A stretch of DNA of 64,000 bases, taken from contig JANJGN010000052.1 of NCBI GenBank assembly GCA_026770705.1, forward strand, positions 248,001 to 312,000, read 5' to 3'. The notes beneath the pieces were generated by a model, which did not search any database, was not told the DNA's origin, and saw only the letters and a program-made list of their open reading frames with translations. The position numbers were made by a program, and so were the translations under genes. Shown here in pieces: positions 300-62,672 of the stretch; the first letter of the stretch is position 1, and every line of letters starts with the position of its first letter. The DNA comes from Isurus oxyrinchus. Taxonomy: Eukaryota.

Positions 300-668
300 T
301 TGGACTGTCACAAGAGTGGAAAGGTGACACTCCACGAGAGGTGACAGCGCAGGAAGGTTCGTGTGTACAGATTCCCTGTCATTACAGTTATCCATCGTGT
401 CTGGAAAACCAACCGCGAGGTGGAGTCTGGTTTAATAATGAGAAACAGATTCCCTGGGCTGCCATTGCCTTTCACTCCAAGGATCACAGTCACGAGTTAC
501 CACGGTTCCACCATCGGACCCGGCTGTCTGGAGACCTGAAAGATGGCGACTGTTCCCTGATTATAAACAACATCAGACGGGAAGATGCGGGACCTTATTT
601 TTTCAGAATAGAATTTGACAATGGTCCGAGCCATAACTATTACCCTGTAACCCAGCTTCACGTTTCTG
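300..668 (+). CDS. Siglec V-set Ig exon (sialic-acid-binding domain)
   Basis: ccccag|TT acceptor and CTG|gtaag donor, 369 nt. CxxxxC in strand B, Cys in strand E, F-strand YFFR with the essential Arg and no F-strand Cys. Confidence 0.92.
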
Positions 669-3512
669 GTAAGTGCTGTGTTATAATTACTCAACAATTC
701 ACATCCAACACTCAATGGGAAATAACACAAACTGTGACATTTACATATTAACACAAAACACAGCTTATTATAACACACTGTCTGATTCTCAATAACCTGG
801 TGATAGCTTCCAGTTCAGTCCTAAAGCAACCTCTAATACTCACTTTAACATGAATGATTAAATGTATTGACTGTGTCCATCAATGTTATCAGGTTATCCA
901 CTCCCATCGATCTCCCTAACCCTGTATGACAGTCTTACATATCGACAAAAGAAAGATTCCCATTTCTATAGCGCCGTTCAACACCTCTGTACATTGCAAA
1001 TGGATTCATAACCAATGAAATAATTCTTGAAATGTTGCCCTTGTTGTAATATGGGACACACAGCAGCCAATTTATTCACAGGAAGCTCCCAGAAACAGCA
1101 ATGTGATCAATAACCTGATCATCTGTTTTAGATGCCGGTTCAGTGATTGGTTCAAATGGATTCTCTCCTGCTGGGAACAGGATAGAATTTTAATCTGGCA
1201 GATTTCGGAGAAAGTAACAAGCCAGTGTGTCAGGAACTGTGAGCTGCTCCCCCACCCTCACCTGGGATTGTCAATTCAATTGTCTCAAAGTGGAAGTGAA
1301 TTCATCTGAGAGACAGAAACTCCACTAAGTCTGAAATTAGGAAATTCTCTCCTGATCGTTGTAATCTCTCAATTCTGATATCATCCTTGTAAAAGTGCTT
1401 TCTCTTGTGGGACTGTGGTTTCTATTTGAACTGATGTTTCACGTTATATTTCTCTAAAAGGATCCATCCTCTGTCTGTTAGATTTCACAGATAAACCCAC
1501 GATATTCCCTGCTGAAATTATAGCAGGAAAGTGTGTGGATGTAAGCTGCACCTTCAACACAACGTGCAATGGAACAGCAGCACCTGTCTTAACCTGGGAC
1601 ACTCCCACTGACGTACCTGGATCAGTCTCAAACACTGTAACTCAGCATGGTGTCACTCTGACCTATACTTCTGTTCTGACCCTGATCCCATCACTCAAAC
1701 ACCATGGACACACTCTCAGCTGCAGAGTGAGATATCCATCTGTTTCATCGGAGCGGACCCTCGTACTAACTGTGCAAGGTAAGTACCGACACCTTTCATT
1801 CTACATCAGCACTCCCTCAGCGCTGACCCTCTGACAGTGCAGCCCGTTCTCAGTATCTACATTCTCAGACCTCTCAAAGTGCTTCACAGTCGATAGAAGT
1901 TAACTGATCTTTATATGATTATTACTGAATGAAGAGACAATCTGTCTAAAGTTTACAGCTCGCACACATTATTTTCCATGGCAACACCGCCTCCAATCAG
2001 AGACCACTTGCCAATCAATCAGCACTCTCTTCCCATTAAATATAAATTGTTGTTCACTTCCTGTTGGTAAACCTGTGATCTGTCATGTTGAGTCCTGCCC
2101 TGACATCTGAATATCACAATGAACAGAACAAGTTCCAACAATGAGCTGTGGTTCGTGATTCCTCATGTTACATCCAGGGACACTGGAGACTATCAGTGTG
2201 TGGCAGAGAATGAACATGGAGCAGTGGAGGGTTTCATAACCATCACTGTGGAATGTGAGTGTACACAGACTTCAACAGCTCTCTCAGATTCAAACACTAC
2301 ACAAACACACACAATTATACAAACCTAAATAGACACGTGCAGACACACAATCCCACATGTATGAGCACACAAAAGGACACACTCACAAACAAACACACTA
2401 ACACATTCTCCCCCATGGGTTACCTGACCTCCCTCAGTGCTGCACCGGAGAGTTGACATGGATTCTGGGAGTTGTATTCCCTTTCAAGTTTATGGAAGAA
2501 CGCGGTAATTGCAAAGTCTATTAGACACCCAGGTGCACAGAGATTCTCACAGATACTCTCTGCCTCTCTAACTCTCTATCCTCCTTTAAAAAGCTTCCTG
2601 AAATCTAACCCTTTGACCAGTCACCTGTCCCAACTCCTCCTTATGTAATTCTGTGTGAAATGTTGTTTGAGTATCTGACAGTAAGAGAGAGATGGAGAGG
2701 TTTACGAAGGAATTTCTATTGGTGAAAAGCTTACATTATGTTCTCACCTTTCCAGAGCCCATTTTGCACATGATGTCCAATGTCCAAGATCATAATGGGG
2801 ATTGAATATGTAAACGTCACGCTGCAGTTACACTCTGCCACCAGTGGTGGCATGGTAGCACTTAACACTTGCATCTCCCAGCTTTTCAAGCAATTTCACT
2901 TCCCAATTTGCTACTACTCACTTCAACCACTCCCTGTGGGAGCGAGTTCCACATTCTCTCCTCTCTCTGGCTAAAGATTGGAACTGTTTATTAAGCGGGG
3001 GGTGTAAGTCCGTGGGGGAGTCCATCTCGATCCTGCCCGATTCGCACACACGGCTGAGATGGATTTCCACCCTGCACTAAACGTTTCCAGAATTTTCTAC
3101 AGCACAATCCTGTACACAGCGATGGAGAGAAACATTGGACAGGGAGTCCAACAGCACAATGATCCATTCTCACCAATGTTCCACGCTAAGGGGAAAGTTC
3201 TGATTGTCCACTCTTAGAGTGTTTACAATGAAAACATTCATTCCACATTGAATCCCAGTGGATGGGTCAATATTACAGCAAATGTTGCAGTGATATGAAG
3301 CTTGATTGTTCAGCCAGAGTGAGAGATTGAAAGCGGAGAGTCAGTGATGATTTCTTTCTGTGTGTTCTCTAGACAGTGGAGGAGAGATTCTGCACGTGAT
3401 CCTGATCCTGGGAATACGAGCTGTGATATTCCTTGTGGCTGTGGTTATCACTATCGCTGGAGTCTGTGTCTGGGAGAGACAAACAGTGAAAGGAAGTCGA
3501 CAGACTGTTTGA
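300..3512 (+). CDS. Siglec-like (CD22/MAG/CD33-related family) activating-type receptor, left copy; exons 300-668 (V), 1482-1778 (C2), 3373-3512 (TM+tail); leader exon outside window
   Basis: AG/GT boundaries and all phase-1 junctions give an open frame. Siglec V-set signature SCVQIPC...W...GDLKDGDCSL...YFFR. TM ILILGIRAVIFLVAVVITIAGVCVW with Arg, then a 12-aa tail without Tyr. Confidence 0.8.
1482..1778 (+). CDS. Siglec domain-2 C2-set Ig exon
   Basis: gttag|AT acceptor and CAAG|gtaag donor, 297 nt. DFTDKPTIFP...SCTFNTTC...LTW...LSCRV includes the extra Cys expected for the V-C2 interdomain disulfide. Confidence 0.9.
2101..2254 (+). pseudogene. 5'-truncated C2-set exon remnant
   Basis: MNRTSSNNELWFVIPHVTSRDTGDYQCVAENEHGAVEGFITITVE with an intact gtgagt donor. 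Homology to the central C2 exons begins only at ~2101; the acceptor, first Cys and Trp are missing. Confidence 0.8.
3373..3512 (+). CDS. Terminal TM/cytoplasmic exon with intramembrane Arg
   Basis: ttctctag|AC acceptor. Reads (D)SGGEILHVILILGIRAVIFLVAVVITIAGVCVWERQTVKGSRQTV*; Arg codon CGA at 3417-3419. Not in the ORF track in this frame. Confidence 0.82.
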
Positions 3513-3539
3513 AGCTTTGTGCAGCAACAATCTCATTAT

Positions 3540-4135
3540 GGAACAGAAGGACGGCATTCAGCCCATCGACTCCATGCTGTCTCTCTGTAGAGCAATACAG
3601 TCAGTCCCATTCCCCCGCTCTATCCCCGTATCCCTGCAAGTTTATTTCCCCTCAAGTGTCCGTCCAATTTCCGTTTGAAATCGTTCATCGTCTCCGCTTC
3701 CACCATCCTCGTAGGCAGCGAGTTCCAGCTCATTACCACTCGCTGTGTAAAAAAGTTCCTCCTCACATCCCCCCTCTGCCCACAACCTTCAATCTGTGTC
3801 CCCCAGTCCTTGTCCCATCAGCTAATGGCAACAGCTTCTCTTTGTCTACCTGATCTAAACCCATCATCATCTTGTACACCTCGATCAGATCCCCCCTCAA
3901 TCTCCTTTGCTCCAAGGAGAACAACCCCAGCTTCTCCAACCCAACCTTGTAGCTAAAATCCCTCATCCCTGGACCCATTCTGCTCAATCTCCTCCCCACC
4001 CTCTCAAGGACCCTCACTTCCTTCCCAAAGTGAGGAGACCAGAACTGGACACAATACTCTAGTTGTGACCTAACCAGAGCTTTATAAATGTTCAGCATAA
4101 CCTCCCTGTGTTTGTACTCAATCCCTCCATTTATG
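3540..4135 (-). mobile_element. CR1-type LINE 3' fragment
   Basis: YKALVRSQLEYCVQFWSP...LGLFSLEQRRLRGDLIEVYK, typical of the CR1 ORF2 C-terminus. Confidence 0.88.
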
Positions 4136-4494
4136 AAAAGCTTATTCTTTCCATCAGCACAAACAGCAATTTCCAAGCGGACTCCCATCAGCAGACAGAG
4201 TGCAATGAAACATCGACATGCCTGCTTCTTAATGTACGGAGAGAATCCTGGAACGAGAGATTCTCCTTCTTCTCCTCAGCAAGCTGAAACTTTTCCTTAT
4301 ACCTGGTGCTCCCCAGTGCTGCTGTGTGGACACATCATAACCACGGCATTGTCTGGCTGTGTGCAGCCAACATGGTCGAATAGGAATGAACAGAAATGTG
4401 ACGTTGCTAAACTCTGTTCTCTGATTGGAATGTGCTTTCTGAATGCTGCACCTTTTTCATGCTGCGATAGATTGTAAGAAGCATTTGGCTTATG

Positions 4495-4500
4495 AATAAA
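4495..4500 (+). terminator. Candidate polyadenylation signal (AATAAA) of the left activating Siglec
   Basis: AATAAA inside a block homologous to the 3' UTR of the central inhibitory gene. Confidence 0.4.
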
Positions 4501-4844
4501 ATTACATTGATTAACTCAAGTGATTAAAATGCTCAGCCTGTTCTGTAGATATTTAGAGATTAAAATTCTTATTTTGCTGCAAAATTCTTGGCTCAAAGAC
4601 ATTACTTCATGTTGTCACGTTTTCCAATCAGATGAATTCCTCTGTCCATCTTTATAATAGAAATTTCCAATGTAAACATGTCACATTGTAGCTGCACACA
4701 CTTGCCAGTGGCTGGTGTGATATCAAAGCTGTCTTGCTGCTCAGAAACAGCGAGAAATATTCCTGTTGTGTGCATGAACTTCATGTTAGCATGAGACACA
4801 GGCATCAGATGCAATTTTGTGCAATTTGTACAATGTTCTTTAGA

Positions 4845-5460
4845 CAGCGCAGCACTCCCTCAGTACTGAACCTCCAACAGCGCAGCACTCCCTCAGTTCA
4901 GACCCTCCTACAGTGCAGCACTCCTTCAGATCAGACCCTCCGACAATGCAGCACTCCCTCAGTTCAAACCCTCCGACAGTGCAGCACTCCCTCAGTTCAG
5001 ACCCTCCGACTGTGCAGCAGTCCCTCAGTTCAAACCCTCAGACAGTGCAGCACTCCATCAGTTCAGAACCTCCGACAGTGCAGCACTCTCTCAGTTCAAA
5101 CCATCCGACAGTGCAGCACTCTAACAGTTCAAACCCTCCGACAGTGCAGCTCTCCCTCAGTTCAAACCCTCCGACAGTGCAGCACTCCCTCAGTTCAGAG
5201 CCTCCGACAGTGCAGCACTCCCTCAGCTCAGACCCTCCGACAGTGCAGCACTCCCTCAGTACTGAACCTCCGACAGTGCAGCACTCCCTCAGTTCAAACC
5301 CTCCGACAGTGCAGCTCTCCCTCAGTTCAAACCCTCCGACAGTGCAGCACTCCCTCAGTTCAGAGCCTCCGACAGTGCAGCACTCCCTCAGCTCAGACCC
5401 TCCGACAGTGCAGCACTCCCTCAGTACTGAACCTCCGACAGTGCCGCACTCCCTCAGTTC
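4845..5460. repeat. 33-bp minisatellite (acagtgcagcactccctcagttcagaccctccg)
   Basis: About 18 tandem units; source of the spurious QTLRQCSTPSV ORFs. Mirrored, shorter, at 57555-58035. Confidence 0.92.
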
Positions 5461-6967
5461 TTCTCCGCCGATGCTGCCAGACCTGCTGAGTTTTTCCAGG
5501 TATTTCTGTTTCTGTTTCTGTTTTGGATTTCCAGCATCTGCAGTTGTTTTGCTTTTAGTGCTGGGCAGTTCCTCAGCAAGGATTCGGGCCACAAAACATT
5601 GCGAGTGCTGTGGGTCTGCGCCACGATTTAGAGAGCTGTGCTTGGCACGCCTATTCTAGTCCCAGTCCAGTGTGGTGGGGAGAGTCTGGCAGTCCTGGGT
5701 TGGTGGTGCCCAGCATGGTGTGCAGGACGTGGTCAGTCCCTCACACACGTCGGTCCTGGGGGTGGGTGGCTTGATACTAGGCCGCAGGTGGCACAATCCC
5801 AGTCAGGGGAGGCATCTGCAGCCTGTCAGTGGGGAGCAGGTAATATAGAGAGTAGGGGTGGGGGTGGGAATCGAGGGGGGCCGGTGGTCTCTGTAAGTCA
5901 CGGTACAATGGGCCTCTAGTTGGAGAGAGGTCAGGTCTACATGGGGCATTGGGATGTCAACATCAGACAGTCTAGGGAGGAGGACTGGGATGTCAACCCC
6001 GAACACAATAAGATCAAGGATTAGAGAGGAAGGGAGGAGACTGATTGGAAGGAGGGGAATGTGCACATTATGCTCCTCCAGCACGATGGGAGGGACTGTG
6101 ATGGTTACGGGGGTGGGGGAGTGACGTGTGAGGGGATAGACGCTTACCTGGTGGTATTGCCTCAGCCTCACCCTTTTTCAAGCTGATCCAATGTCGCAGT
6201 TGAAGAATAAGCTACAAAACAAATTGGCAGGGGAGGTCTCCCAGGGCCTGTGGGAGACATCACCCACTGCATCTTCGGCCTGTTTGAAGGGGCACCCGAA
6301 CAATTCCGGCTTTTCCAAATGATGAGGAAGACACAGCTGCACCCCGAGTCCCCTACTGGGGATCCAGAAGGTTGCAATAGCGCTGCGAGGGACTCATGGG
6401 CTCCACAGTGACTCCCTAATTAGCGACTGGAAGGTTTATGTTCATTTATCTTTATTATCCGTTCATATTGAGCAATGGAGCTCCTGATCTGTCACCTTTC
6501 TGTACCTCGTCCAATGCTTCTGTTATCAGGACTTCCACATCGATGTGAAAGAGCCATGATGATAGCAGACAGTCGCACAATGGGAATGGCACTAGGCCAG
6601 TGATCCAGAGGCCCAGGTGAATGCTTTGAAGGCACGGGTTCAAATCCCACCACGGCAGCTGGAGGAATTTCAATTCGATTAATCAATAAATTTAATTGAT
6701 TGATACATTTTTTTCTTATTCATTTCAGGGATGTTGGTGTCGCTGACTAGGCCAGTATTTGTTGCCCATCCCCAATTGCCTTTGAGAACATCTGGATATC
6801 TGAGTTAGGATCAGGAGTAGGTCACTCAGCCCCTCGAACCTGCTCCGCCATTCAGTAAGATCATGGCTGATCTGATTGTCACCTCAACCTCACATTCCTG
6901 CCTACCCCCAATGACCTTTCACCCCCTTGTTAATCAAGAATCTATCTAGCTCTGTGGAAGGGGAGCC

Positions 6968-8905
6968 AATCAATTGGGCTGCTTTGTCCTGGATGGTGTC
7001 GAGCTTCTTGAGTGTTGTTGGAGCTGCACTCATCCAGGCATGTGGAGAGTATTCCATCACACTCCTGACTTGTGCGTTGTAGATGGTGGACAGGCTTTGG
7101 GGAGTCAGGAGGTGAGTTACTGTCTGCAGGGTTCCCAGCCTCTGACCTGCTCTTGCAGCCACAGTGTTTATATGGCTGGTCCAGTTCAGTTTCTGCTCAA
7201 TGGTAACTCCCAGGATGTTGATATTGGGGGATTCATTGATGGTAATGCCATTGAATGCCAAGGGGCGATGGTTATGAATGGTCTGTGGAATATTCTGGTA
7301 CAAAATTTCAACACTCGGACTCCAGATGCAATATTCAAGTGGTTCCTATATTACGCATGTGGGGAGCAAACGCTGGGCAGTCCAGGCGCTTCTCCACCGA
7401 GGTTCAAATGAGCACAGTTTATATATTTTTACTCTCAGTTACAACGTAATGGTATTAGTTAGACAAAGGCCACAGCACAATGACCCCCCGGTGGGCTGAT
7501 AATTGTGTTCTTGTACAGTAATTACAGGGCAGAGACTGGCTATTGTCCTTTTGAGACAGCAAAGAATCTATGTTTGTTCGCTACAAAAGGTTTCCGGGGG
7601 CTGACTGGATGTGGTTCAAGGCCATCGGACGGTGTGAAATAACCTTCCCCATTTCTTGATTGAGTCACCCAGTGTCCTTGTGTGTGTGTCTCCCATTTCC
7701 TCATTGCAAATTTCCAACGGATCCCTTAGTACAGGTTTTTAAGTTTTCACGTAAGGATGTGTACGCTTTGGCGCCCTAGCTGTTGGTCCTGGCTGGCTCT
7801 TGAACATAAATCCAAATTTTCTGCACCTTCAATGAGATTCTCTCTTGTTGGAGTTGGTCATTGCTTGGTACTTGTGTGGCATGAATGTTACTTGTCACCT
7901 GTCAGCCCAAGCCTGGATGTTGTCCAGGTCTTGCTGCATTTGGACATAACTTGCTTCAGTATCTGAGGAGCCGTGAATGGTGCTGAACATTGTGCAAACA
8001 TCAGCAAACATCCCCACTTCTGACCTTATGATGGAAGGAAGGTCATTGATGAAGCAGTTGAAGATGTTTGAGCCTAGGACACTACCCTGAGTAACTCCTG
8101 CAGTGATGTCCTGGAACTGAGATGATTGACCCCCAATAATCACAACCATCGTCCTTTGTGCTGGGTATGACTCCAAGCAGCGGAGAGTTTTCCCCCGATT
8201 CCCATTGACTCCAGTTTTGCTCGGGCTCCTTGATTTGCCACACTCAGTCAAATGCTGCCTTGATATCAAGGACAGTCACTCTCACCTCTGGAGTTCAGCT
8301 CATTTGTGCATGTTTGAACCAAGGCTGTAATGAGGCCAGGAGCTGAATGATCCTGGTGGAACACAAACTGAGCGTCAGTGAGCAGGTTCTTGCTAAGCAG
8401 GTGCTGCTTGCAAGCACTGTTGATGACCCCTTCCATCACTTTAGTAATGATCAAGAATAGACTGCTGGGGAATTGGCTGGGTTGGATTTGTCCTGCTTTT
8501 TGTGTACAGGACGTACCCCATAGCCGGGTAGTTGCCAGTGTTGCAGCTGTACTAGAAAATTCCAGAAAAGCTTGGCTAGGGGCGCAGCAAGTTCTGGAGC
8601 ACAAGTCTTCAGTACTATTGCCAGAATATTGTCAGGGCCTGGAGCCTTTGCAATATCCAGTGCCTTCAGCCCTTTCTTGATGTCACGTGGAATTAATCGA
8701 ATTGGCTAAAGATTGGCATCTCTGATGCTGGGGATCTCCGGAGGAGGCCGAGATGGATCACCCACTCAGCACTTCTGGCTGAAGATTGTTGCGCATGCTT
8801 CAGTCTTGTCTTTTGCACCGATGTGCTGGGCTCCTCCATCATTGAGGATGGGGATATTTGTGGAGCCTCCTCCTCCAGTGAGTTGTTTAATTGTCCATGA
8901 CTGGA
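6968..8905 (-). mobile_element. Degenerate non-LTR retrotransposon (CR1/L2 group) reverse transcriptase, interrupted at ~7274-7843
   Basis: Frameshifted motifs GVTQGSVLG, MFADV, QDLDNIQAWAD, QVRSVMEYSP, LDTIQDKAA. Confidence 0.88.
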
Positions 8906-10769: not shown

Positions 10770-11240
10770 TCACACACCCACACCCACACAGACACACTGA
10801 CACACTCACTCATTCACATTGACACACACTGACACAGTCACACACACCCACACAGACACACTGACACACTCACTCATTCACATTGACACACACTGACACA
10901 GTCACACACACCCACACAGACACACTGACACACTCACTCATTCACATTGACACACACTGACACAGTCACACACACCCACACAGACACACTGACACACTCA
11001 CTCATTCACATTGACACACACTGACACAGTCACACACACCCACACAGACACACTGACACACTCACTCATTCACATTGACACACACTGACACAGTCACACA
11101 CACCCACACAGACACACTGACACACTCACTCATTCACATTGACACACACTGACAGTCACACACACCCACACAGACACACTGACACACTCACTCATTCACA
11201 TTGACACACACATATTGACAGTCACACACACACACACACA
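10770..11240. repeat. ~58-bp CA-rich tandem repeat
   Basis: Repeated cacagacacactgacacactcactcattcacattgacacacactgacacagtcacacacacc. Mirrored at ~51960-52260. Confidence 0.85.
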
Positions 11241-11571
11241 CGCTCATAAAGACAGACACAAACACAGTCACGTGAGGTGAATAGTGTCGATGTATTTAAG
11301 GGGAAGCTGGATAAACACACGAGGGAGAAATGAATAGAAGGATATGGTGATGGGGTGAGATGGAGAAGGGGTGGGCGGAGACTCGTGTGGAGCAGAAACA
11401 CCAGCATGGAGCAGATGGGCCGAATGGCTTCTTTCCCTGCTGTAAAACGCAGGTAAAGTTTCAGTTGGAATTAATGAACAGGGCCTGTGTGAAATAGATT
11501 GCTAAGCAATGATAAGGAGGGGAGAGGCTGTGGCATGGTGCAGGATGACCTTGCGTGAATGAGGCCAGGGT

Positions 11572-15976: not shown

Positions 15977-16045
15977 CTCTGCCTGTCTCTTCTGATCTTC
16001 TGGCTCTGCTTTGATGCTTTGGTTTGTAACTAGAGGAGCTTCCTG

Positions 16046-18915: not shown

Positions 18916-18943
18916 CTCTTGAAGGGTTCTCAAAATTTCCAAC

Positions 18944-20525: not shown

Positions 20526-20560
<35 letters not shown>

Positions 20561-23706: not shown

Positions 23707-23737
<31 letters not shown>

Positions 23738-27416: not shown

Positions 27417-27472
<56 letters not shown>

Positions 27473-46905: not shown

Positions 46906-46974
46906 CAGGAAGCTCCTCTAGTTACAAACCAAAGCATCAAAGCAGAGCCAGAAGATCAGAAGAGACAGGCAGAG

Positions 46975-49900: not shown

Positions 49901-50050
49901 ACACCTCCTCCGGTCCCGATGTTCCTCCAAAATCTCTGACATTACTGCATCTCCCGGGACCCCCTGATTCCCATCGCTCCACCATTGGTGGCCGTGCCTT
50001 CAGCTGCCTGGGGCCCTGAGCTCCGGAATACCCTCCCTTAACCTCTCTGC

Positions 50051-50081
<31 letters not shown>

Positions 50082-51629: not shown

Positions 51630-51957
51630 ACCCTGGCCTCATTCACGCAAGGTCATCCTGCACCATGCCACAGCCTCTCCCCTCCTTATCTACTGCTTAG
51701 CAATCTATTTCACACAGGCCCTGTTCATTAATTCCAACTGAAACTTTACCTGTGTTTTACAGCAGGGAAAGAAGCCATTTGGCCCATCTGCTCCATGCTG
51801 GTGTTTCTGCTCCACACGAGTCTCCGCCCACGCCTTCTCCATCTCACCCCATCACCATATCCTTCTATTCATTTCTCCCTCATGTGTTTATCCAGCTTCC
51901 CCTTAAATACATCGACACTATTCACCTCACGTGACTGTGTTTGTGTCTGTCTTTATG

Positions 51958-51989
<32 letters not shown>

Positions 51990-54107: not shown

Positions 54108-56050
54108 TCCAGTCGTGGACAATTAAACAACTCACTGGAGGAGGAGGCTCCACAAATATCCCCATCCTCAATGATGGAGGAGCCCAGCACATCGGTGCAA
54201 AAGACAAGACTGAAGCATGCGCAACAATCTTCAGCCAGAAGTGCTGAGTGGGTGATCCATCTCGGCCTCCTCCGGAGGTCCCCAGCATCAGAGATGCCAA
54301 TCTTTAGCCAATTCGACTAATTCCACGTGACATCAAGAAAGGGCTGAAGGCACTGGATATTGCAAAGGCTCCAGGCCCTGACAATATTCTGGCAATAGTA
54401 CTGAAGACTTGTGTTCCAGAACTTGCTGCGCCCCTAGCCAAGCTTTTCTGGAATTTTCTAGTACAGCTGCAACACTGGCAACTACCCGGCTATGGGGTAC
54501 GTCCTGTACACAAAAAGCAGGACAAATCCAACCCAGCCAATTCCCCAGCGGTCTATTCTTGATCATTACTAAAGTGATGGAAGGGGTCATCAACAGCGCT
54601 TGCAAGAAGCACCTGCTTAGCAAGAACCTGCTCACTGACGCTCAGTTTGTGTTCCACCAGGATCATTCAGCTCCTGCCCTCATTACAGCCTTGGTTCAAA
54701 CATGCACAAATGAGCTGAACTCCAGAGGTGAGAGGGACTGCCCTTGACATCAAGGCAGCATTTGACTGAGTGTGGCAAATCAAGGAGCCCGAGCAAAACT
54801 GGAGTCAATGGGAATCGGGGGAAAACTCTCCGCTGCTTGGAGTCATACCCAGCACAAAGGACGATGGTTGTGATTATTGGGGGTCAATCATCTCAGTTCC
54901 AGGACATCACTGCAGGAGTTACTCAGGGTAGTGTCCTAGGCTCAAACATCTTCAACTGCTTCATCAATGACCTTCCTTCCATCATAAGGTCAGAAGTGGG
55001 GATGTTTGCTGATGTTTGCACAATGTTCAGCACCATTCACGGCTCCTCAGATACTGAAGCAAGTTATGTCCAAATTCAGCAAGACCTGGACAACATCCAG
55101 GCTTGGGCTGACAGGTGACAAGTAACATTCATGCCACACAAGTACCAGGCACTGACCAGCTCCAACAAGAGAGAATCTCATTGAAGGTGCAGAAAATTTG
55201 GATTTATGTTCAAGAGCCAGCCAGGACCAGCAGCTAGGGCGCCAAAGCGTACACATCCTTACGTGAAAACTTAAAAACCTGTACTAAGGGCTCAGTTGGA
55301 AATTTGCAATGAGGAAATGGGAGACACACACACAAGGACACAGGGTGACTCAATCAAGAAATGGGGAAGGTTATTTCACACCCTCCGATGGCCTTGAACC
55401 ACATCCAGTCAGCCCTCAGAAACCTTTTGTATCGAACAAACATAGATTCTTTGCTGTCTCAAAAGGACAATAGCCAGTCTCTGCCCTGTAATTACTGAAC
55501 AAGAACACAATTATCAGCCCACCGGAGGGTCATTGTACTGTGGCCTTGTCTAACTAATACCATTACCTTGTAACTGAGAGTAAAAAATATATAAACTGTG
55601 CTCATTTGAACCTCGGTGGAGAAGTGCCTGGACTGCCCAGCGTTTGCTCCCCACATGCCTAATAAAGGAACCACTTGAATATTGCATCTGGAGTCCGAGT
55701 GTTGAAATTTTGTACCAGAATATTCCACAGACCATTCATAACCATTGCCCCTTGGCATTCAATGGCATTACCATCAATGAATCCCCCAATATCAACATCC
55801 TGGGAGTTATCATTGAGCAGAAACTGAACTGGACCAGCCATATAAACACTGTGGCTGCAAGAGCAGGTCAGAGGCTCAGAATCCTGCAGACAGTATCTCA
55901 CCTCCTGACTCCCCAAAGCCTGTCCACCATCTACAACGCACAAGTCAGGAGTGTGATGGAATACTCTCCACATGCCTGGATGAGTGCAGCTCCAACAACA
56001 CTCAAGAAGCTCGACCCCATCCAGGACAAAGCAGCCCGATTGATTGGCTC
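54108..56050 (+). mobile_element. Degenerate non-LTR retrotransposon RT (mirror of 6968-8905)
   Basis: Same motifs and the same internal interruption. Confidence 0.88.
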
Positions 56051-57554
56051 CCCTTCCACAGAGCTAGATAGATTCTTGATTAACAAGAGGGTGAAAGGTC
56101 ATTGGGGGTAGGCAGGAATGTGAGGTTGAGGTGACAATCAGATCAGCCATGATCTTACTGAATGGCGGAGCAGGTTCGAGGGGCTGAGTGACCTACTCCT
56201 GATCCTAACTCAGATATCCATATGTTCTCAAAGGCAATTGGGGATGGGCAACAAATACTGGCCTAGCCAGCGACACCAACATCCCTGAAATGAATAAGAA
56301 AAAAATGTATCAATCAATTAAATTTATTGATTAATGGAATTGAAATTCCTCCAGCTGCCGTGGTGGGATTTGAACCCGTGCCTTCAAAGTATTCACCTGG
56401 GCCTCTGGATCACTGGCCTAGTGCCATTCCCATTGTGCGACTGTCTGCTATCATCATGGCTCTTTCACATCGATGTGGAAGTCCTGATAACAGAAGCATT
56501 GGACGAGGTACAGAAAGGTGACAAATCAGGAGCTCCATTGCTCAATATGAACGGATAATAAAGATAAATGAACATAAACCTTCCAGTCGCTAATTAGGGA
56601 GTCACTGTGGAGCCCATGAGTCCCTCGCAGCGCTATTGCAACCTTCTGGATCCCCAGTAGGGGACTCGGGGTGCAGCTGTGTCTTCCTCATCATTTGGAA
56701 AAGCCGGAATTGTTCGGGTGCCCCTTCAAACAGGCCGAAGATGCAGTGGGTGATGTCTCCCACAGGCCCTGGGAGACCTCCCCTGCCAATTTGTTTTGTA
56801 GCTTATTCTTCAACTGCGACATTGGATCAGCTTGAAAAAGGGTGAGGCTGAGGCAATACCACCAGGTAAGCTTCTATCCCCTCCCACTTCACCCCCCCAC
56901 CCCCGTAACCATCACAGTCCCTCCCATCGTGCTGGAGGAGCATAATGTGCACATTCCCCTCCTTCCAATCAGTCTCCTCCCTTCCTCTCTAATCCTTGAT
57001 GTTATTGTGTTCAGGGTTGACATCCCAGTCCTCCTCCCTAGACGGTCTGATGTTGACATCCCAATGCCCCATGTAGATCTGACCTCTCTCCAACTAGAGG
57101 CCCATTGTACTGTGACTTACAGAGACCACCGGCCCCCCTCGATTCCCACCCCCACCCCTACTCTCTATATTACCTGCTCCCCACTGACCGGCTGCAGATG
57201 CCTCCCCTGACTGGGATTGTGCCACCTGCGGCCAGGTATCAAGCCACCCACCCCCAGGATGGACGTGTGTGAGGGACTGACCACGTCCTGCACACCATGC
57301 TGGGCACGACCAACCCAGGACTGCCAGGCTGTCCCCACCACACTGGACTGGGACTAGAATAGGCATGCCAAGCACAGCTCTCTAAATCGTGGCACAGACC
57401 CACAGCACTCGCAATGTTTTGTGGCCCGAATCCTTGCTGAGGAACTGCCCAGCACTAAAAGCAAAAAAACTGCAGATGCTGGAAATCCAAAACAGAAACA
57501 GAAACAGAAATACCTGGAAAAACTCAGCTGGTCTGGCAGCATCGGCGGAGAAGA

Positions 57555-58035
57555 ACTGAGGTAGTGCGGCACTGTCGGAGATTCAGTACTGAGGGAGTGC
57601 TGCACTGTCGGAGGTTCAGTACTGAGGGAGTGCTGCACTGTCGGAGGGTTTGAACTGAGGGAGTGCTGCACTGTCGGAGGCTCTGAATTGAGGGAGTGCT
57701 GCACTGTCGGAGGGTTTGAACTGAGGGAGTGCTGCACTGTCGGAGGCTCTGAAATGAGGGAGAGCTGCACTGTCGGAGGCTCTGAAATGAGGGAGTGCTG
57801 CACTGTCGGAGGGTCTGAAATGAGGGAGTGCTGCACTGTCGGAGGCTCTGAAATGAGGGAGTGCTGCACTGTCGGAGGGTTTGAACTGAGGGAGTGCTGC
57901 ACTGTCGGAGGGTATGAACTGAGAGAGAGCTGCACTGTCGGAGGGTTTGAACTGAGGGAGTGCTGCACTGTAGGAGGGTCTGAACTGAGGGAGTGCTGCA
58001 CTGTTGGAGGGTCAGGACTGAGGGAGTGCTGCGCT
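57555..58035. repeat. 33-bp minisatellite (mirror of 4845-5460)
   Basis: gagggagtgctgcactgtcggaggg..tgaact units. Confidence 0.9.
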
Positions 58036-58744
58036 GTCTAAAGAACATTGTACAAATTGCACAAAATTGCATCTGATGCCTGTGTCTCATGCTAACATGA
58101 AGTTCATGCACACAACAGGAATATTTCTCGCTGTTTCTCTGCAGCAAGACAGCTTTGATATCACACCAGCCACTGGCAAGTGTGTGCAGCTACAATGTGA
58201 CATGTTTACATTGGAAATTTCTATTATAAAGATGGACAGAGGAATTCATCTGATTGGAAAACGTGACAACATGAAGTAATGTCTTTGAGCCAAGTATTTT
58301 GCAGCAAAACAAGAATTTTAATCTTTAAATATCTACAGAACAGGCTGAGCATTTTAATCACTTGTGTTAATCAATGTAATTTTATTCATAACCCAAATGC
58401 TTCTTACAATCTATCGCAGCATGAAAAAGGTGCAGCATTCAGAAAGCACATTCCAATCAGAGAACAGAGTTTAGCAACGTCACATTTCTGTTCATTCCTA
58501 TTCGACCATGTTGGCTGCACACAGCCAGACAATGCCGTGGTTATGATGTGTCCACACAGCAGGACTGGGGAGCACCAGGTATAAGGAAAAGATTCAGCTT
58601 GCTGAGGAGAAGAAGGAGAATCTCTCGTTCCAGGTTTCTCTCCGTACATTAAGAAGCAGGCATGTCGATGTTTCATTGCACTCTGTCTGCTGATGGGAGA
58701 CCGCTTGGAAATTGCTGTTTGTGCTGATGGAAAGAATAAGCTTT

Positions 58745-59325
58745 TCATAAATCGAGGGAATGAGTACAAACACAGGGAGGTTATGCTGAACATTTATAAA
58801 GCTCTGGTTAGGTCACAACTAGAGTATTGTGTCCAGTTCTGGTCTCCTCACTTTGGGAAGGAAGTGAGGGTCCTTGAGAGGGTGGGGAGGAGATTGAGCA
58901 GAATGGGTCCAGGGATGAGGGATTTTAGCTACAAGGTTGGGTTGGAGAAGCTGGGGTTGTTCTCCTTGGAACAAAGGAGATTGAGGGGGGATCTGATCGA
59001 GGTGTACAAGATGATGATGGGTTTAGATAATGTAGACAAAGAGAAGCTGTTGCCATTAGCTGATGGGACAAGGACTGGGGGACACAGATTGAAGGTTTTG
59101 GGCAGAGGGGGGATGTGAGAAGGAACTTTTTTACACAGCGAGTGGTAATGAGCTGGAACTCGCTGCCTACGAGGATGGTGGAAGTGGAGACAATGAACGA
59201 TTTCAAACAGAAATTGGACGGACACTTGGAAATAAACTCACAGGGATACGGAGATAGAGCGGGGGAATGGGACTGACTGGATTGCTCTACAGAGAGACAG
59301 CATGGACTCAATGGGCCAAATGTCC
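58745..59325 (+). mobile_element. CR1-type LINE 3' fragment (mirror of 3540-4135)
   Basis: YKALVRSQLEYCVQFWSP...RRLRGDLIEVYK. Confidence 0.88.
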
Positions 59326-59459
59326 TCCTCCATTGCTGCAATAACTCGATGATACGGAGATGATTCTAACCAGGATTCTGACCAGTTTCATTACAACTTA
59401 ACCCAACATCACACGTTATTTGTCCGCACTGACTGACCAGATTGTTGCTGTACAAAGCT

Positions 59460-62400
59460 TCAAACAGTCTGTCGACTTCCTTTCACTGTTTGTCTCTCCC
59501 AGACACAGACTCCAGCGATAGTGATAACCACAGCCACAAGGAATATCACAGCTCGTATTCCCAGGATCAGGATCACGTGCAGAATCTCTCCTCCACTGTC
59601 TAGAGAGCACACAGAAAGAAATCATCACTGACTCTCTGCTTTCAATCTCTCACTCTGGCTGAACAATCAAGCTTCATATCACTGCAACATTTGCTGTAAT
59701 ATTGACCCATCCACTGGGATTCAATGTGGAATGAATGTTTTCATTGTAAACACTCGAAGAGTGGACAATCGGAACTATCCCCTTAGCGTGGAACATTGGT
59801 GAGAATGGATCATTGTGCTGTTGGACTCCCTGTCCAATGTTTCTCTCCATCGCTGTGTACAGGATTGTGCTGTAGAAAATTCTGGAAACGTTTAGTGCAG
59901 GGTGGAAATCCATCTCGGACGTGTGTGCGAATCGGGCAGGATCGAGATGGACTCCCCCACGGACTTACAACCCCCGCTTAATAAACAGTTCCAATCTTTA
60001 CCCAGAGAGAGAGGAGAATGTGGAACTCGCTCCCACAGGGAGTGGTCGAGGTGAATAGTAGCAAATTAGGATGGGAAATTGCTTGAAAAGCTAGGAGATG
60101 CAAGGGTTAAGTGCTACCGTGCCACCACTGGTGGGAGAGTGTAACTACAGCGTGACGTTTACATAGGCAATCCCCATTATGAACTTGGACATTGGACATC
60201 ATGTGCAAAATGGGCTCTGGAAAGGTGAGAACATGATGTAAGCTTTTCACCAACAGAAATTCCTTCGTAAACCTCTCCATCTCTCTCTTACTGTCAGATA
60301 CTCAAACAACATTTCACACAGAATTACATAAGGAGGAGTTGGGACAGGTGACTGGTCAAAGGGTTAGATTTCAGGAAGCTTTTTAAAGGAGGATAGAGAG
60401 TTAGAGAGGCAGAGAGTATCTGTGAGAATCTCTGTGCATCTGGGTGTCTAATAGACTTTGCAATTTCCGCATTCTTCCATAAACTTGAAAGGGAATACAA
60501 CTCCCAGAATCCATGTCAACTCTCCGGTGCAGCACTGAGGGAGGTCAGGTAACCCACGGGGGAGAATGTGTTAGTGTGTTTGTTTGTGAGTGTGTCCTTT
60601 TGTGTGCTCATACATGTGGGATTGTGTGTCTGCACGTGTCTATTTAGGTTTGTATAATTGTGTGTGTTTGTGTAGTGTTTGAATCTGAGAGAGCTGTTGA
60701 AGTCTGTGTACACTCACGTTCCACAGTGATGGTTATGAACCCCTCCACTGCTCCATGTTCATTCTCTGCCACACACTGATAGTCTCCAGTGTCCCTGGAT
60801 GTAACGTGAGGAATCACCAACCACAGCTCATTGTTGGAACTTGTTCTGTTCATTGTGATATTCAGATGTCAGGGCAGGACTCAACATGACAGATCACAGG
60901 TTTACCAACAGGAAGTGAACAACAATTTATATTTAATGGGAAGAGAGTGCTGATTGATTGGCAAGTGGTCTCTGATTGGAGGCGGTGTTGCCATGGAAAA
61001 TAATGTGTGCGAGCTGTAAAGTTTAGGCAGATTGTCTCTTCATTCAGCAATAATCAAATAAAGATCAGTTAACTTCTATCGACTGTGAAGCACTTTGAGA
61101 GGTCTGAGAATGTAGATACTGAGAACGGGCTGCACTGTCAGAGGGTCAGCGCTGAGGGAGTGCTGATGTAGAATGAAAGGTGTCGGTACTTACCTTGCAC
61201 AGTTAGTATGAGGGTCCGCTCCGATGAAACAGATGGATATCTCACTCTGCAGCTGAGAGTGTGTCCGTGGTGTTTGAGTGATGGGATCAGGGTCAGAACA
61301 GAAGTATAGGTCAGAGTGACACCATGCTGAGTTACAGTGTTTGAGACTGATCCAGGTACATCAGTGGGAGTGTCCCAGGTTAAGACAGGTGCTGCTGTTC
61401 CATTGCACGTTGTGTTGAAGGTGCAGCTTACATCCATACGCTTTCCTGCAATAATTTCAGCAGGGAATATCATGGGTTTATCTGTGAAATCTAACAGACA
61501 GAGAATGGATCCTTTTGGAGAAATATAACGTGAAACATCAGTTCAAATAGAAACCACAGTCCCACAAGAGAAAGCACTTTTACAAGGATGATATCAGAAC
61601 TGAGAGATTACAACGATCAGGAGAGAATTTCCTATTTTCAGACTTAGTGGATTTTCTGTCTCTCAGATGAATTCACTTCCACTTTGAGACAATTGAACTG
61701 ACAATCCCAGGTGAGGGTGGGGGAGCAGCTCACAGTTCCTGACACACTGGCTTGTTACTTTCTCTGAAATCTGCCAGATTTAAATTCTATCCTGTTCCCA
61801 GCAGGAGAGAATCCATTTGAACCAATCACTGAACCGGCATCTAAAACAGATGATCAGGTTATTGATCACATTGCTGTTTCTGGGAGCTTCCTGTGAATAA
61901 ATTGGCTGCTGTGTGTCCCATATTACAACAAGGGCAACATTTCAAGAATTATTTCATTGGTTGTGAAACCATTTGCAACGTACAGAGGTGTTGAAAGGCG
62001 CTATAGAAATGCGAATCTTTCTTTTGTCGATATGTAAAACTGTCAAACAGGGTTAGGGAGATCGATGGGAGTGGATAACCTGATAACATTGATGGACACA
62101 GTCAATACTTTTAATCATTGATATTAAAGTGAGTATTAGAGGTTGCTTTAGGACTGAACTGGAAGCTATCACCAGGTTATTGAGAATCAGACAGTGTGCT
62201 ATAATAAGCTGTGTTTTGTGTTAATATGTAAACGTCACAGTTTGCGTTATTTCCCATTGAGTGTTGAATGTGAATTGTTGAGTAATTATAACACAGCACT
62301 TACCAGAAACGTGAAGCTGGGTTACAGGGTAATAGTTATGGCTCGGACCATTGTCAAATTCTATCCTGAAAAAATAAGGTCCTGCATCTTCCCGTCTGAT

Positions 62401-62672
62401 GTTGTTTATAATCAGGGAACAGTCGCCATCTTTCAGGTTTCCAGACAGCCAGGTCCGATGGTGGAACCGTGGTAACTCGTGACTGTGATCCTTGGAGTGA
62501 AAGGCAATGGGAGCCCAGGGAATCTGTTTCTCATTATTAAACCAGAGTCCACCTCGCGGTTGGTTTTCCAGACACGATGGATAACTGTAATGACAAGGAA
62601 TCTGTACACACGAACCTTCCTGCGCTGTCACCTCTCGTGGAGTGTCACCGTTCCACTCTTGTGAGGGTTCAA
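59460..62672 (-). CDS. Siglec-like activating-type receptor, right copy; exons 62672-62304 (V), 61490-61194 (C2), 59599-59460 (TM+tail); leader exon not identified
   Basis: Same splice sites and open frame as the left copy. YFFR Arg is retained (AGG), the TM exon is identical, and V has seven amino-acid differences. Confidence 0.8.
60718..60871 (-). pseudogene. 5'-truncated C2-set exon remnant (mirror of 2101-2254)
   Basis: MNRTSSNNELWLVIPHVTSRDTGDYQCVAENEHGAVEGFITITVE with no acceptor. Confidence 0.8.

What the first reader, a model, noticed from the sequence alone, without database searches (positions are those of the whole stretch)
300..62672. Paired activating and inhibitory Siglec-like receptors organised in a ~63-kb palindrome with hepcidins
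Seen: two mirror-image V-C2-TM(Arg) short-tailed genes flank a central C2-TM-ITIM/ITSM-like module (LFYANI, TEYAQI). Established: primate Siglec-5/14 and Siglec-11/16 are paired receptors homogenised by gene conversion, and TM Arg/Lys residues recruit ITAM adaptors (DAP12 or FcR-gamma). Inference: a paired-Siglec system in a probable shark, co-duplicated with an antimicrobial hepcidin as one innate-immune cassette.
Basis: partly seen in the sequence, partly recalled or inferred. Interest (0 to 1): 0.85.

Follow-up and report, generated by a model that had tools for sequence, protein, structure and literature searches.

The report
Shark Siglec-like receptor genes, inverted duplication
This shark DNA holds two mirror-image copies of an activating-type sialic-acid-receptor gene, each with a hepcidin gene, around the tail half of an inhibitory-type relative; paired receptors of this kind are described in mammals but already appear in automatic annotations of other sharks.

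Summary
Bases 1-27470 and 39890-62980 are inverted copies (91-98% identical) around a 12.4-kb spacer.

**Each arm** carries:
- a Siglec-type V exon with the essential YFFR arginine;
- a C2 exon;
- a terminal exon encoding a membrane helix with an Arg and a 12-residue tail;
- a three-exon hepcidin gene.

**The spacer** carries three tandem C2 exons (one frameshifted), an uncharged TM exon, a cytoplasmic exon and a tail exon with LFYANI and TEYAQI.

- No leader exon lies in the window, so the arm genes are cut at their 5' ends.
- The central module has no leader, V or first C2 exon of its own. No complete inhibitory partner is shown here.
- The right hepcidin copy has a mutated exon-1 splice donor.
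- The inverted orientation rests on scaffold joins across microsatellite gaps. I could not test it with reads.

**Family level.** The pairing is well supported: RefSeq models of great white, basking and cat sharks include both TM-Arg and ITIM/ITSM forms with about 95% identical ectodomains.

**Hepcidin.** Hepcidin beside Siglec genes is old vertebrate synteny, not evidence of a functional cassette.

Follow-ups of this scan reached the same family-level reading on other pieces of this genome. Verdict: a new member of a known kind, of moderate interest.

The parts
1..27470 (.). Left arm of the inverted duplication; it starts at the window edge, so its true outer end is unknown
39890..62980 (.). 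Right arm of the inverted duplication. Its inner end abuts the gap 39748-39889, and it holds the gap 41101-41275
27471..39889 (.). Spacer. The left part is a tandem array of ~1.07-kb units (microsatellite + intron + C2 exon); the right part is short pieces between four gaps
300..668 (+). Siglec-type V-set exon (left arm), with the YFFR arginine and the C..PC / DCSL cysteine pattern. Probably the membrane-proximal V of a V-V or V gene
1482..1778 (+). First C2-set exon ('C2a'), equivalent to Siglec domain 2
2102..2254 (+). Relic 3' half of a 'C2b' exon. It is preceded by a stop and has no usable acceptor, so it cannot be spliced in
3373..3512 (+). Terminal exon: SGGEILHVILILGIRAVIFLVAVVITIAGVCVWERQTVKGSRQTV*, a TM helix with Arg and a 12-residue tail
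4355..4523 (+). 3'UTR segment with AATAAA (4495), ~80% identical to the sequence just after the ITIM-tail stop codon (33660-33832)
15884..15961 (-). Left hepcidin exon 1 (signal peptide MKWRLVLFTLTLLLSLQLSHFFSLSR), GT donor intact, TATAAG ~90 nt upstream
14020..14076 (-). Left hepcidin exon 2 (propeptide), inferred from splice sites and frame
11572..11688 (-). Left hepcidin exon 3: RQKR cleavage site and an 8-Cys mature peptide
20942..21240 (-). Pseudo-exon: V domain of another Siglec-like subfamily (like P0203/P0206). It has an in-frame TAG in place of Trp and is cut off by a gag-like retroelement remnant. Its leader exon lies at 22061-22106. Present in the left arm only
28176..28457 (+). Central 'C2b' exon copy 1, intact, phase 1-1
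29224..29504 (+). Central 'C2b' exon copy 2; a 1-nt deletion 9 nt into the exon shifts the frame
30315..30596 (+). Central 'C2b' exon copy 3, intact
31414..31510 (+). Uncharged TM exon (RDSSKWTVGLFTAGIMLSVFLAGIFIFICVR), phase 1 to 2
32389..32470 (+). Cytoplasmic exon (RKTAMEERVSGTSDIVLTPSPLSVKHQ), phase 2 to 0
33386..33634 (+). Tail exon with ITIM LFYANI and ITSM-like TEYAQI, then the stop codon
46990..47067 (+). Right hepcidin exon 1. The coding sequence is identical to the left copy, but the splice donor GT is mutated to TT
49133..49189 (+). Right hepcidin exon 2, identical to the left copy
51513..51629 (+). Right hepcidin exon 3; five differences from the left copy, all non-synonymous
59460..59599 (-). 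Right-arm TM(Arg) terminal exon, identical to the left copy (0 differences in 140 nt)
60718..60870 (-). Right-arm relic half of a C2b exon
61194..61490 (-). Right-arm C2a exon (7 nt differences from the left copy)
62304..62672 (-). Right-arm V exon (11 nt and 7 amino-acid differences from the left copy; YFFR kept)

Best explanation
**What it is.** The window is a piece of a large, fast-changing cluster of Siglec-type (CD33-like) immune-receptor genes in a lamniform shark. The cluster lies in the old vertebrate hepcidin-Siglec neighbourhood.

**The arms.** A segment of at least 27 kb is present twice in inverted orientation. It carries the 3' part of an activating-type receptor gene and a three-exon hepcidin gene. 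The receptor part consists of a V domain with the sialic-acid-binding arginine, a C2 domain, and a terminal exon for a membrane helix with an Arg and a 12-residue tail.

**The centre.** Between the copies lies the 3' half of an inhibitory-type family member:
- three tandem C2 exons, one of them frameshifted;
- an uncharged TM exon and a cytoplasmic exon;
- a tail exon with an ITIM (LFYANI) and an ITSM-like motif (TEYAQI).

This half has no leader, V or first C2 exon of its own. It is most likely an orphaned 3' module left by the rearrangement. A mis-join at a microsatellite that separated it from its 5' exons is the alternative.

**Origin of the activating genes.** They derive from an inhibitory-type gene. 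Each keeps a relic of the next C2 exon after its C2 exon, and each ends in a 3'UTR homologous to the one after the ITIM exon.

**Inferred function, from the motifs only.**
- The ectodomains bind sialylated ligands through the V-domain arginine.
- ITIM/ITSM members recruit SHP-type phosphatases.
- TM-Arg members pair with an ITAM adaptor that carries a membrane Asp (DAP12 or FcR-gamma type).
- Nearly identical ectodomains would thus give opposite signals, as in mammalian Siglec-5/14.

**Hepcidin.** The hepcidin genes travel along because they were already neighbours. The right-hand copy is probably splice-defective.
For: **Shown by tool results.**
- Inverted repeat.
- Exon structure with canonical splice sites and matching phases.
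- Pfam V-set, Ig_CD22, C2-set_2, I-set and Hepcidin above cut-off.
- The V exon's 17 strongest PDB sequence hits are Siglecs: Siglec-5 9.7e-16, then Siglec-7, Siglec-8 and CD33, MAG 1.6e-12, sialoadhesin 1.1e-11. Its YFFR aligns with the essential Arg of Siglec-5 and Siglec-7.
- That Arg is kept in at least 90% of 50 family members.
- The AlphaFold model of the great-white homologue P0268 (leader-V-C2a-TM(Arg); window exons ~93-96% identical to this class of model) has pLDDT 84.7. All its top structural matches are Siglecs, with CD33 (5IHB) first at E 2e-20.
- Named RefSeq relatives exist in more than 20 elasmobranch species.
- Of 149 elasmobranch family models fetched, 16 end in the same TM-Arg exon. 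Most are Carcharodon carcharias models; the rest are from catsharks. About 57 have the uncharged TM type, and about half of those carry ITIM + TEYAQI tails.
- Activating and inhibitory V-C2a units intermingle on a tree at path distances of 0.03-0.08.
- The TM(Arg) exon has 0 differences in 140 nt between arms, against ~2.7% in the neighbouring sequence.
- Relic C2b exon and shared 3'UTR with AATAAA.
- No leader anywhere in the window, and no further family exons on the + strand between 3.5 and 28 kb.
- The left-arm V-C2a unit is closer to a great-white protein (98%) than to the right arm (95%). This argues that the arms are old paralogues, not haplotype or assembly copies.

**From papers.** Hepcidin is linked to MAG, USF2 and FFAR genes in mammals, and FFAR genes lie close to CD22 on 19q13.1 (PMC4453067; reference list of PMC10029227). 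In fish hepcidin is linked to usf2-etfb-lim2-iglon5 (PMC10029227).
Against: - There is no RNA or read evidence for this window.
- The species itself is absent from the protein databases; the best identity is 98%.
- Ligand binding, adaptor pairing and phosphatase recruitment are inferred from motifs only.
- The central module may still be functional. Five of its six exons are intact. V-less models of the same build exist in great white (P0259) and basking shark (P0243).
- The tree is poorly resolved: 3 starred branches of 37.
- The inverted orientation relies on joins across gaps at microsatellites. The left arm-spacer junction is itself a ~330-bp imperfect (TG)n tract.
Confidence: 0.7

Rival explanations
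1. **Scaffolding artefact.** The two arms are real paralogous (or very divergent allelic) copies. Their inverted orientation, or their adjacency to the central module, would then be an error made when short contigs were joined across microsatellites. The true locus would be an ordinary tandem array of Siglec-like genes.
For: - There are six gaps, all beside CA/TG or CT low-complexity sequence.
- The path from the centre to the right arm crosses four gaps within 4 kb, and the right arm's inner end abuts a gap.
- The left arm-spacer junction lies in a (TG)n tract that recurs in every intron of the C2 array.
- The family has dozens of near-identical copies, which invites mis-joins.
Against: - The order of blocks on both sides of gaps 1 and 6 is collinear between the arms.
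- The gap of 135 N inside the C2 array fits the unit length: 1048 vs 1091 nt.
- First-stage notes report similar inverted Siglec/hepcidin layouts on other pieces of this genome (unchecked).
- The arms differ by 2.5-8% and by a 3.4-kb indel, so they are not copies of one haplotype.
Confidence: 0.3
2. **One long gene with two outputs.** Transcripts starting upstream of the window would run through the left-arm V and C2 exons. They would then either end at the TM(Arg) exon (activating form) or skip it and splice 26 kb on to the central C2-TM-ITIM exons (inhibitory form). Both forms would carry the same ligand-binding head. Recombination between the arms could swap which arm feeds the central module.
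For: - The left-arm exons and the central module share strand and order, and the phases fit: C2a ends in phase 1 and the C2b exons start in phase 1.
- Complete inhibitory genes of relatives have exactly this exon order, V-C2a-C2b-C2b-TM-cyt-tail (P0172).
- V-less C2b-TM-tail models in two other lamniform sharks suggest the module persists without its own V.
Against: - Introns in this family are 0.3-1.6 kb. A 26-kb intron holding a terminal exon with an intact AATAAA and an antisense hepcidin gene would be a strong outlier.
- No RefSeq gene among those fetched has both TM-Arg and ITIM isoforms.
- One of the three C2 exons is frameshifted, and the poly(A) hexamer homologous to the arm's is degenerate in the centre.
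Confidence: 0.12
3. **Siglec-like in fold only.** The receptors would be members of a shark-specific Ig-receptor expansion that no longer, or never, bind sialic acid. The mammalian names given by annotation pipelines would then mislead.
For: - No binding data exist.
- No tree with mammalian Siglecs was made.
- The nearest non-elasmobranch relatives are automatically named fish proteins.
- A first-stage note says a neighbouring distal V lacks the arginine (unchecked).
Against: - The essential Arg and the Siglec cysteine pattern are kept in both arm V domains and in at least 90% of 50 relatives.
- All top sequence and structure matches are Siglecs.
- The tail has the CD33-type ITIM plus TEY motif pair.
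Confidence: 0.1

Closest known systems
Human paired receptors Siglec-5 / Siglec-14 (and Siglec-11 / Siglec-16)
   Same: - A Siglec V domain with the essential Arg.
- Near-identical ectodomains joined either to an ITIM + ITIM-like tail or to a TM helix with a basic residue and a short tail.
- The genes are neighbours in one cluster (PMC4042635 for Siglec-5/14).
   Different: - The shark TM(Arg) exon has no detected similarity to the mammalian ones.
- Many shark members have two to four V domains in tandem.
- There are dozens of copies rather than one pair.
- The origin is probably independent.
- No adaptor or ligand data exist.
- In this window the inhibitory partner is only a 3' half.
CD33 (Siglec-3) and the CD33-related Siglecs
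   Same: - CD33 is the best structural match of the V-C2 unit: 5IHB, E 2e-20, 32% identity.
- The best sequence matches of the V exon are Siglec-5, -7, -8 and CD33.
- The tail layout is an ITIM followed ~25 residues later by a TEY..I motif at the C-terminus.
   Different: - Orthology with the mammalian CD33-related clade was not tested.
- The literature states that fish lack CD33-related Siglecs (PMC7226832, teleost-centred).
- MAG scores only about 10 bits lower on the V exon.
RefSeq models of other sharks, e.g. Carcharodon carcharias XP_041037231 / XP_041037150 (V-V-C2-TM(Arg)), XP_041037226 (ITIM form), XP_041037176 (C2 array-TM-ITIM without V)
   Same: - The window's exons are 93-98% identical in protein to these models.
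- They have the same exon junctions (…LTVQ|DSGGEIL…, …ITVE|R/C|RDSSKW…) and the same tail motifs.
   Different: - They come from a different species.
- Their genomic layout could not be fetched, so it is unknown whether the inverted arrangement and the hepcidin genes are shared.
HAMP-USF2-MAG-CD22 block of human 19q13.1 and hamp-usf2-etfb-lim2-iglon5 of teleosts
   Same: Hepcidin lies next to Siglec genes. In fish it also lies next to genes that flank the human CD33-related cluster (PMC4453067, PMC10029227; the position of ETFB/LIM2/IGLON5 beside human CD33 is from my own knowledge).
   Different: Here hepcidin is embedded inside an expanded Siglec-like array and is itself duplicated. USF2 and the other markers are not in the window.
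Other paired Ig-superfamily receptor families (KIR, LILR/PIR, fish NITR and LITR)
   Same: - Multigene clusters with inhibitory ITIM members.
- Activating members that carry a basic TM residue and short tails.
- Activating forms derived from inhibitory ones.
   Different: - The ectodomain here is a Siglec-type lectin domain rather than an MHC-type or unknown-ligand Ig domain.

Membership tests
Siglec (I-type lectin) | N-terminal V-set Ig domain with a conserved arginine on strand F that binds the sialic-acid carboxylate | tested here: met
   YFFR in both arm V exons aligns with the YFFR of Siglec-5 and Siglec-7. The Arg is nearly invariant in 50 relatives.
Siglec (I-type lectin) | Unusual cysteine pattern: an intra-sheet B-E disulfide plus a Cys for an interdomain bond to domain 2 | tested here: met
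   By sequence only: C..PC and DCSL in the V exon align with Siglec-5, and C2a has three Cys (VSC, TTC, LSC). Disulfides were not examined in the model.
Siglec (I-type lectin) | V domain followed by C2-set domains in the D1-D2(-D3) arrangement | tested here: met
   C2a matches domain 2 of MAG, CD33 and Siglec-10. C2b matches domain 3 of MAG and Siglec-8. The two-domain model matches CD33, MAG, Siglec-10, CD22 and Siglec-5.
Siglec (I-type lectin) | Sialic-acid-dependent ligand binding | not testable with these tools
   This needs recombinant protein and glycan binding assays.
CD33-related Siglec subgroup | Cytoplasmic membrane-proximal ITIM plus membrane-distal ITIM-like/ITSM motif | tested here: met
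   LFYANI and TEYAQI in the tail exon 33386-33634. The same pair is present in about 28 relatives.
CD33-related Siglec subgroup | Phylogenetic grouping with mammalian CD33-related Siglecs rather than with MAG, CD22, Siglec-1 or Siglec-15 | not tested
   No mammalian reference sequences could be brought into a tree. There are only rankings: CD33-related hits lead the V-exon sequence search and CD33 leads the fold search, with MAG close behind.
Activating partner of a paired receptor | Basic residue inside the TM helix and a short tail without signalling motifs | tested here: met
   ILHVILILGIRAVIFLVAVVITIAGVCVW followed by ERQTVKGSRQTV*. The homologue is modelled as a helix over residues 238-273. 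The exon is conserved from catsharks to lamniform sharks.
Activating partner of a paired receptor | Association with an ITAM adaptor (DAP12, FcR-gamma) | not testable with these tools
Co-immunoprecipitation is needed.
Activating partner of a paired receptor | An inhibitory counterpart with a highly similar ectodomain encoded nearby | tested here: inconclusive
   Met at family level: activating and inhibitory V-C2a units lie within 0.03-0.08 path distance of each other. In this window the inhibitory module has no V or C2a of its own.
Hepcidin | Small secreted prepropeptide with a furin site and an 8-cysteine mature peptide, encoded by a three-exon gene | tested here: met
   Pfam Hepcidin scores 30.8 bits against a cut-off of 27. 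RQKR is followed by the C-CC-CC-C-CC pattern. Exons 1-3 carry AG/GT sites and give 83 aa in all. The right copy has TT in place of the exon-1 donor GT.
Genomic palindrome (inverted segmental duplication) | Two long, highly similar arms in inverted orientation around a unique spacer, in contiguous sequence | tested here: inconclusive
   The arms and spacer are present. Seven sequence blocks are joined by six gaps of estimated length, and no reads could be laid.

The most novel reading that the evidence does not exclude
The left arm and the centre form one transcription unit. By choosing its terminal exon it would make an activating (TM-Arg) or an inhibitory (ITIM/ITSM) Siglec-like receptor with the same ligand-binding head, with a hepcidin gene nested antisense in the long intron. 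Because the arms are mirror images, recombination between them could flip the central module so that the other arm's slightly different V domain feeds the inhibitory tail.
Probability: 0.12. Interest if true: 0.75.

Novelty: new member of a known kind. Interest (0 to 1): 0.42.

Why it matters
- **Age of paired Siglecs.** Paired activating and inhibitory Siglecs have been described in mammals, and reviews of fish state that CD33-related inhibitory Siglecs are missing (PMC7226832). A large shark family with both signalling types on near-identical ectodomains would mean one of two things: this balancing design is as old as jawed vertebrates, or it arose again independently.
- **Ancestral locus.** The cluster's position around hepcidin suggests that the human MAG/CD22/HAMP block and the CD33-related block descend from one ancestral locus.
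- **Limits of this window.** It adds a local example with signs of how an activating gene was made from an inhibitory one. The family itself is already visible in RefSeq annotation of other sharks and in other follow-ups of this scan.

Tried and rejected
1. **Reads.** No splice junctions, depth or spanning reads could be obtained.
2. **Genomic context in relatives.** Synteny and the palindrome could not be compared in other sharks.
3. **Leader exon.** A search for the family's leader MIGKSYFLLSLLQ (up to 4 substitutions, six frames) and for any Met-hydrophobic-GT exon upstream of the right-arm V found nothing.
4. **Hidden exons.** tblastn of 300 family proteins against the window found no V or C2a exon on the + strand between 3.5 and 28 kb.
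5. **Transcripts of this species.** Two homologous-protein searches, with P0012 and P0268, returned no protein above 98% identity to the window.
6. **Arm relic C2b exon as a usable exon.** Rejected: a stop lies directly upstream, and the only AG inside gives the wrong phase.
7. **Homology between the TM(Arg) exon region and the central TM, cytoplasmic and tail exons.** Only the 170-nt 3'UTR segment matches.
8. **False haplotype duplication.** Judged unlikely. The arms differ by 2.5-8% and by a 3.4-kb indel. The left V-C2a unit is closer to a great-white protein than to the right arm.
9. **Positive selection in hepcidin.** Five non-synonymous and no synonymous differences in exon 3 is not significant, because about three-quarters of random changes are non-synonymous. 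The divergence there equals the local background.
10. **Papers on shark DAP12 or FcR-gamma.** The search found nothing usable.
11. **Joined spliced protein.** It was not built or searched. Exons were searched one by one by reference, and full-length database homologues stood in for the joined product.

Full report
**Source and gaps.** The window is vertebrate DNA: GC 47%, CpG observed/expected 0.30, six runs of N. I tested the gaps first.
- All six N runs adjoin CA/TG or CT low-complexity sequence on at least one side.
- No exon described below contains N. The nearest exon is 146 nt from a gap, so no reading frame depends on continuity across a gap.
- The 135-N gap inside the central exon array fits the array's period: exon starts are 1048 and 1091 nt apart.
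- The joins themselves could not be checked. I sent none of those letters to a search tool afterwards.

**The inverted repeat is real in the sequence as given.**
- Bases 1-27470 match 62980-39890 in reverse complement at 91-98%.
- Tandem arrays differ in length between the arms.
- A 3.4-kb stretch (18941-22375) is present only on the left.
- The left arm begins at base 1, so the repeat may extend beyond the window.
- The sequence consists of seven blocks joined by gaps. The left arm and hepcidin lie in one block and the right arm in another. The route from the centre to the right arm crosses four gaps within 4 kb.
- The order of blocks around gaps 1 and 6 is collinear between the arms. The inverted orientation of the right arm relative to the centre rests on scaffolding alone.

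**Arm genes.** Each arm has the following:
- a V exon (300-668; mirror 62304-62672);
- a C2 exon (1482-1778; mirror 61194-61490);
- an unspliceable 3' half of a further C2 exon (2102-2254; mirror 60718-60870);
- a terminal exon (3373-3512; mirror 59460-59599) reading SGGEILHVILILGIRAVIFLVAVVITIAGVCVWERQTVKGSRQTV*.

Splice sites are canonical and the phases are 1-1-1.

**Evidence that the arm genes are Siglec-type.**
- The V exon passes Pfam V-set and the CD22-like first Ig domain.
- Its 17 strongest PDB hits are Siglecs: Siglec-5 at 9.7e-16, then Siglec-7, Siglec-8, CD33, MAG, Siglec-10 and sialoadhesin. YFFR aligns with the arginine that binds sialic acid.
- The C2 exon matches domain 2 of MAG, CD33 and Siglec-10.

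**The arm genes are cut at their 5' ends.** The family's leader (MIGKSYFLLSLLQ) is nowhere in the window. Great-white relatives are either leader-V-C2-TM(Arg) or leader-V-V-C2-TM(Arg). A first-stage note places a distal V exon 1.75 kb beyond the window's right end (unchecked).

**Centre.** On the + strand lie:
- three tandem C2 exons of a second type (28176-28457, 29224-29504, 30315-30596);
- an uncharged TM exon (31414-31510);
- a cytoplasmic exon (32389-32470);
- a tail exon (33386-33634) ending ...EELFYANINFSKLPGGDRTVHRSEDTEYAQIRFQKN*.

The phases chain correctly: 1-1, 1-2, 2-0, 0-stop. The second C2 exon has a 1-nt deletion nine bases in and would stop translation. No leader, V or first-type C2 exon lies near this module. 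tblastn with 300 family proteins found none on the + strand between 3.5 and 28 kb.

**The family.**
- A full HMMER scan with the V exon found 254 representatives at E <= 1e-10.
- The close ones are RefSeq models from sharks and rays. They carry automatic names such as Siglec-5, -7, -8, -10, -12, -13 and -14, CD33-like and MAG-like.
- The window's exons are 93-98% identical in protein to Carcharodon carcharias models and a little less to Cetorhinus maximus. The source is therefore a lamniform shark whose own proteins are not in the databases.
- Of 149 elasmobranch family models fetched, 16 end in the same TM(Arg) exon. Most are great-white models; the rest are from catsharks, so the exon is old.
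- About 57 have the uncharged TM type, and about half of those carry an ITIM plus TEYAQI tail.
- A complete inhibitory gene has the order leader-V-C2a-C2b-C2b-TM-cyt-tail (P0172).
- V-less models made only of C2b exons, TM and tail exist in great white (P0259) and basking shark (P0243).
- On a tree of V-C2a units, activating and inhibitory members intermingle at path distances of 0.03-0.08. Resolution is poor: 3 starred branches of 37.
- An AlphaFold model of P0268, a great-white leader-V-C2a-TM(Arg) homologue, has pLDDT 84.7 and a TM helix. All its top structural matches are Siglecs, with CD33 first.

**How the activating genes arose.** Three observations bear on this.
- Each arm gene keeps a relic of the next C2 exon in the usual place after C2a.
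- About 850 nt beyond the TM(Arg) stop, after a LINE-like fragment, lies a 170-nt segment with AATAAA. It is 80% identical to the sequence directly after the ITIM-tail stop in the centre, and it occurs nowhere else in the window.
- The TM(Arg) exon is identical between the arms (0 of 140 nt). The V and C2a exons differ by 3.0% and 2.4%, with dN/dS near 0.5.

I read this as an inhibitory-type gene whose 3' part was replaced by the TM(Arg) exon. That is the usual route to activating partners, and it leaves each arm gene a self-contained unit with its own poly(A) signal.

**Status of the central module.** Introns in this family are 0.3-1.6 kb. Splicing from the left-arm C2a over 26 kb, past a terminal exon and an antisense hepcidin gene, is possible but would be exceptional. 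The frameshifted C2 exon and the degenerate poly(A) hexamer (TATAAT where the arms have AATAAA) point the same way. I judge the module most likely to be an orphaned 3' half, or to have been parted from its 5' exons by a mis-join at the (TG)n tract that forms the arm-spacer junction. The single-gene, two-output reading keeps about 12%.

**Hepcidin.**
- The left gene has a signal-peptide exon (15884-15961), a propeptide exon (14020-14076) and a third exon (11572-11688). The third exon encodes RQKR and an 8-Cys peptide. A TATAAG lies about 90 nt upstream of the ATG.
- In the right copy, exons 1 and 2 are identical in coding sequence. The exon-1 donor reads TT instead of GT, and the nearest GT would shift the frame.
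- Exon 3 of the right copy has five differences, all non-synonymous. That is within neutral expectation.
- The note that the copies differ only in the mature peptide is therefore incomplete.

**Hepcidin beside Siglec genes is inherited.** HAMP lies with USF2, MAG and the FFAR genes in mammals, and FFAR genes lie close to CD22 on 19q13.1 (PMC4453067; reference list of PMC10029227). It lies with usf2-etfb-lim2-iglon5 in fish (PMC10029227). In humans the last three genes flank the CD33-related cluster (my own knowledge). Co-duplication therefore needs no functional link.

**Are the arms artefacts?**
- They differ too much for copies of one haplotype.
- The left V-C2a unit is closer to a great-white protein (98%) than to the right arm (95%).
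- The hepcidin copies differ in a splice site.

I take the duplication as real (about 85%) and the inverted layout as probable (about 65%).

**Comparison and novelty.**
- The closest known system is the mammalian Siglec-5/14 type of paired receptor. The shark family shares the design but not the TM exon. It also adds tandem V domains and many copies.
- Reviews say fish lack CD33-related Siglecs (PMC7226832), and I found no paper on shark Siglecs.
- The genes are nevertheless already predicted in RefSeq for many elasmobranchs. Follow-ups of this scan reached the same family-level reading on other pieces of this genome.
- This window is therefore a new member of a known kind. Two points of interest remain: the evolutionary footprint of inhibitory-to-activating conversion, and an unverified palindromic layout.

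Noticed in passing
window 46990-47073: The right-arm hepcidin copy has TT instead of the GT splice donor after exon 1. It is the only difference from the left copy in ~220 nt of promoter and exon 1. The nearest GT lies 1 nt upstream and would shift the frame, so this copy may be a pseudogene.
   Followed up: partly
window 20942-21240 and 22061-22106 (- strand): Leader and V pseudo-exons of a different Siglec-like subfamily, 84-89% identical to the N-termini of Cetorhinus models P0203/P0206. A TAG replaces a Trp codon, and the V exon is cut off by a gag-like retroelement remnant (19.5-21.0 kb). They lie in a 3.4-kb stretch found only in the left arm.
   Followed up: partly
window 29224-29504: The second of the three central C2 exons has a single-base deletion (ACC-CAG instead of ACCACAG) that shifts the frame. 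It is either a decaying exon or a base-calling error.
   Followed up: partly
window 4355-4523, 58358-58523, 33660-33832: A 170-nt 3'UTR segment is shared only by the two TM(Arg) genes and the ITIM tail exon. The arms keep AATAAA where the centre has TATAAT.
   Followed up: yes
window 4843-5460, 12156-12484, 14491-14762, 24458-24782, 26852-27210, 32683-32827, 40150-40370, 48447-48719, 50749-51047, 57553-58038: Arrays of a 33-nt satellite (unit like GACAGTGCAGCACTCCCTCAGTTCAGACCCTCC) are scattered on both strands. 37-nt arrays lie at 14825-15682, 18333-18919, 47269-48384 and 63633-63992, and a 72/144-nt array at 22375-24165 and 42848-43896. They account for most length differences between the arms.
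   Followed up: no
window 6905-8705, 34761-35500, 54308-56108; also 1-273, 3766-4275, 21245-21745, 62699-63266: Fragments of non-LTR retrotransposons (weak Pfam RVT_1 hits, below the cut-off) and a repeated LINE-tail-like element lie directly upstream of the V exons and downstream of the TM(Arg) exons.
   Followed up: partly
The tool says the filter also trips by chance.
   Followed up: no
proteins P0259 (Carcharodon carcharias) and P0243 (Cetorhinus maximus): RefSeq names the V-less C2-array/TM/ITIM models 'hemicentin-1-like' and 'intercellular adhesion molecule 5-like'. By sequence they are the 3' halves of Siglec-like inhibitory receptors, so those names mislead.
   Followed up: partly
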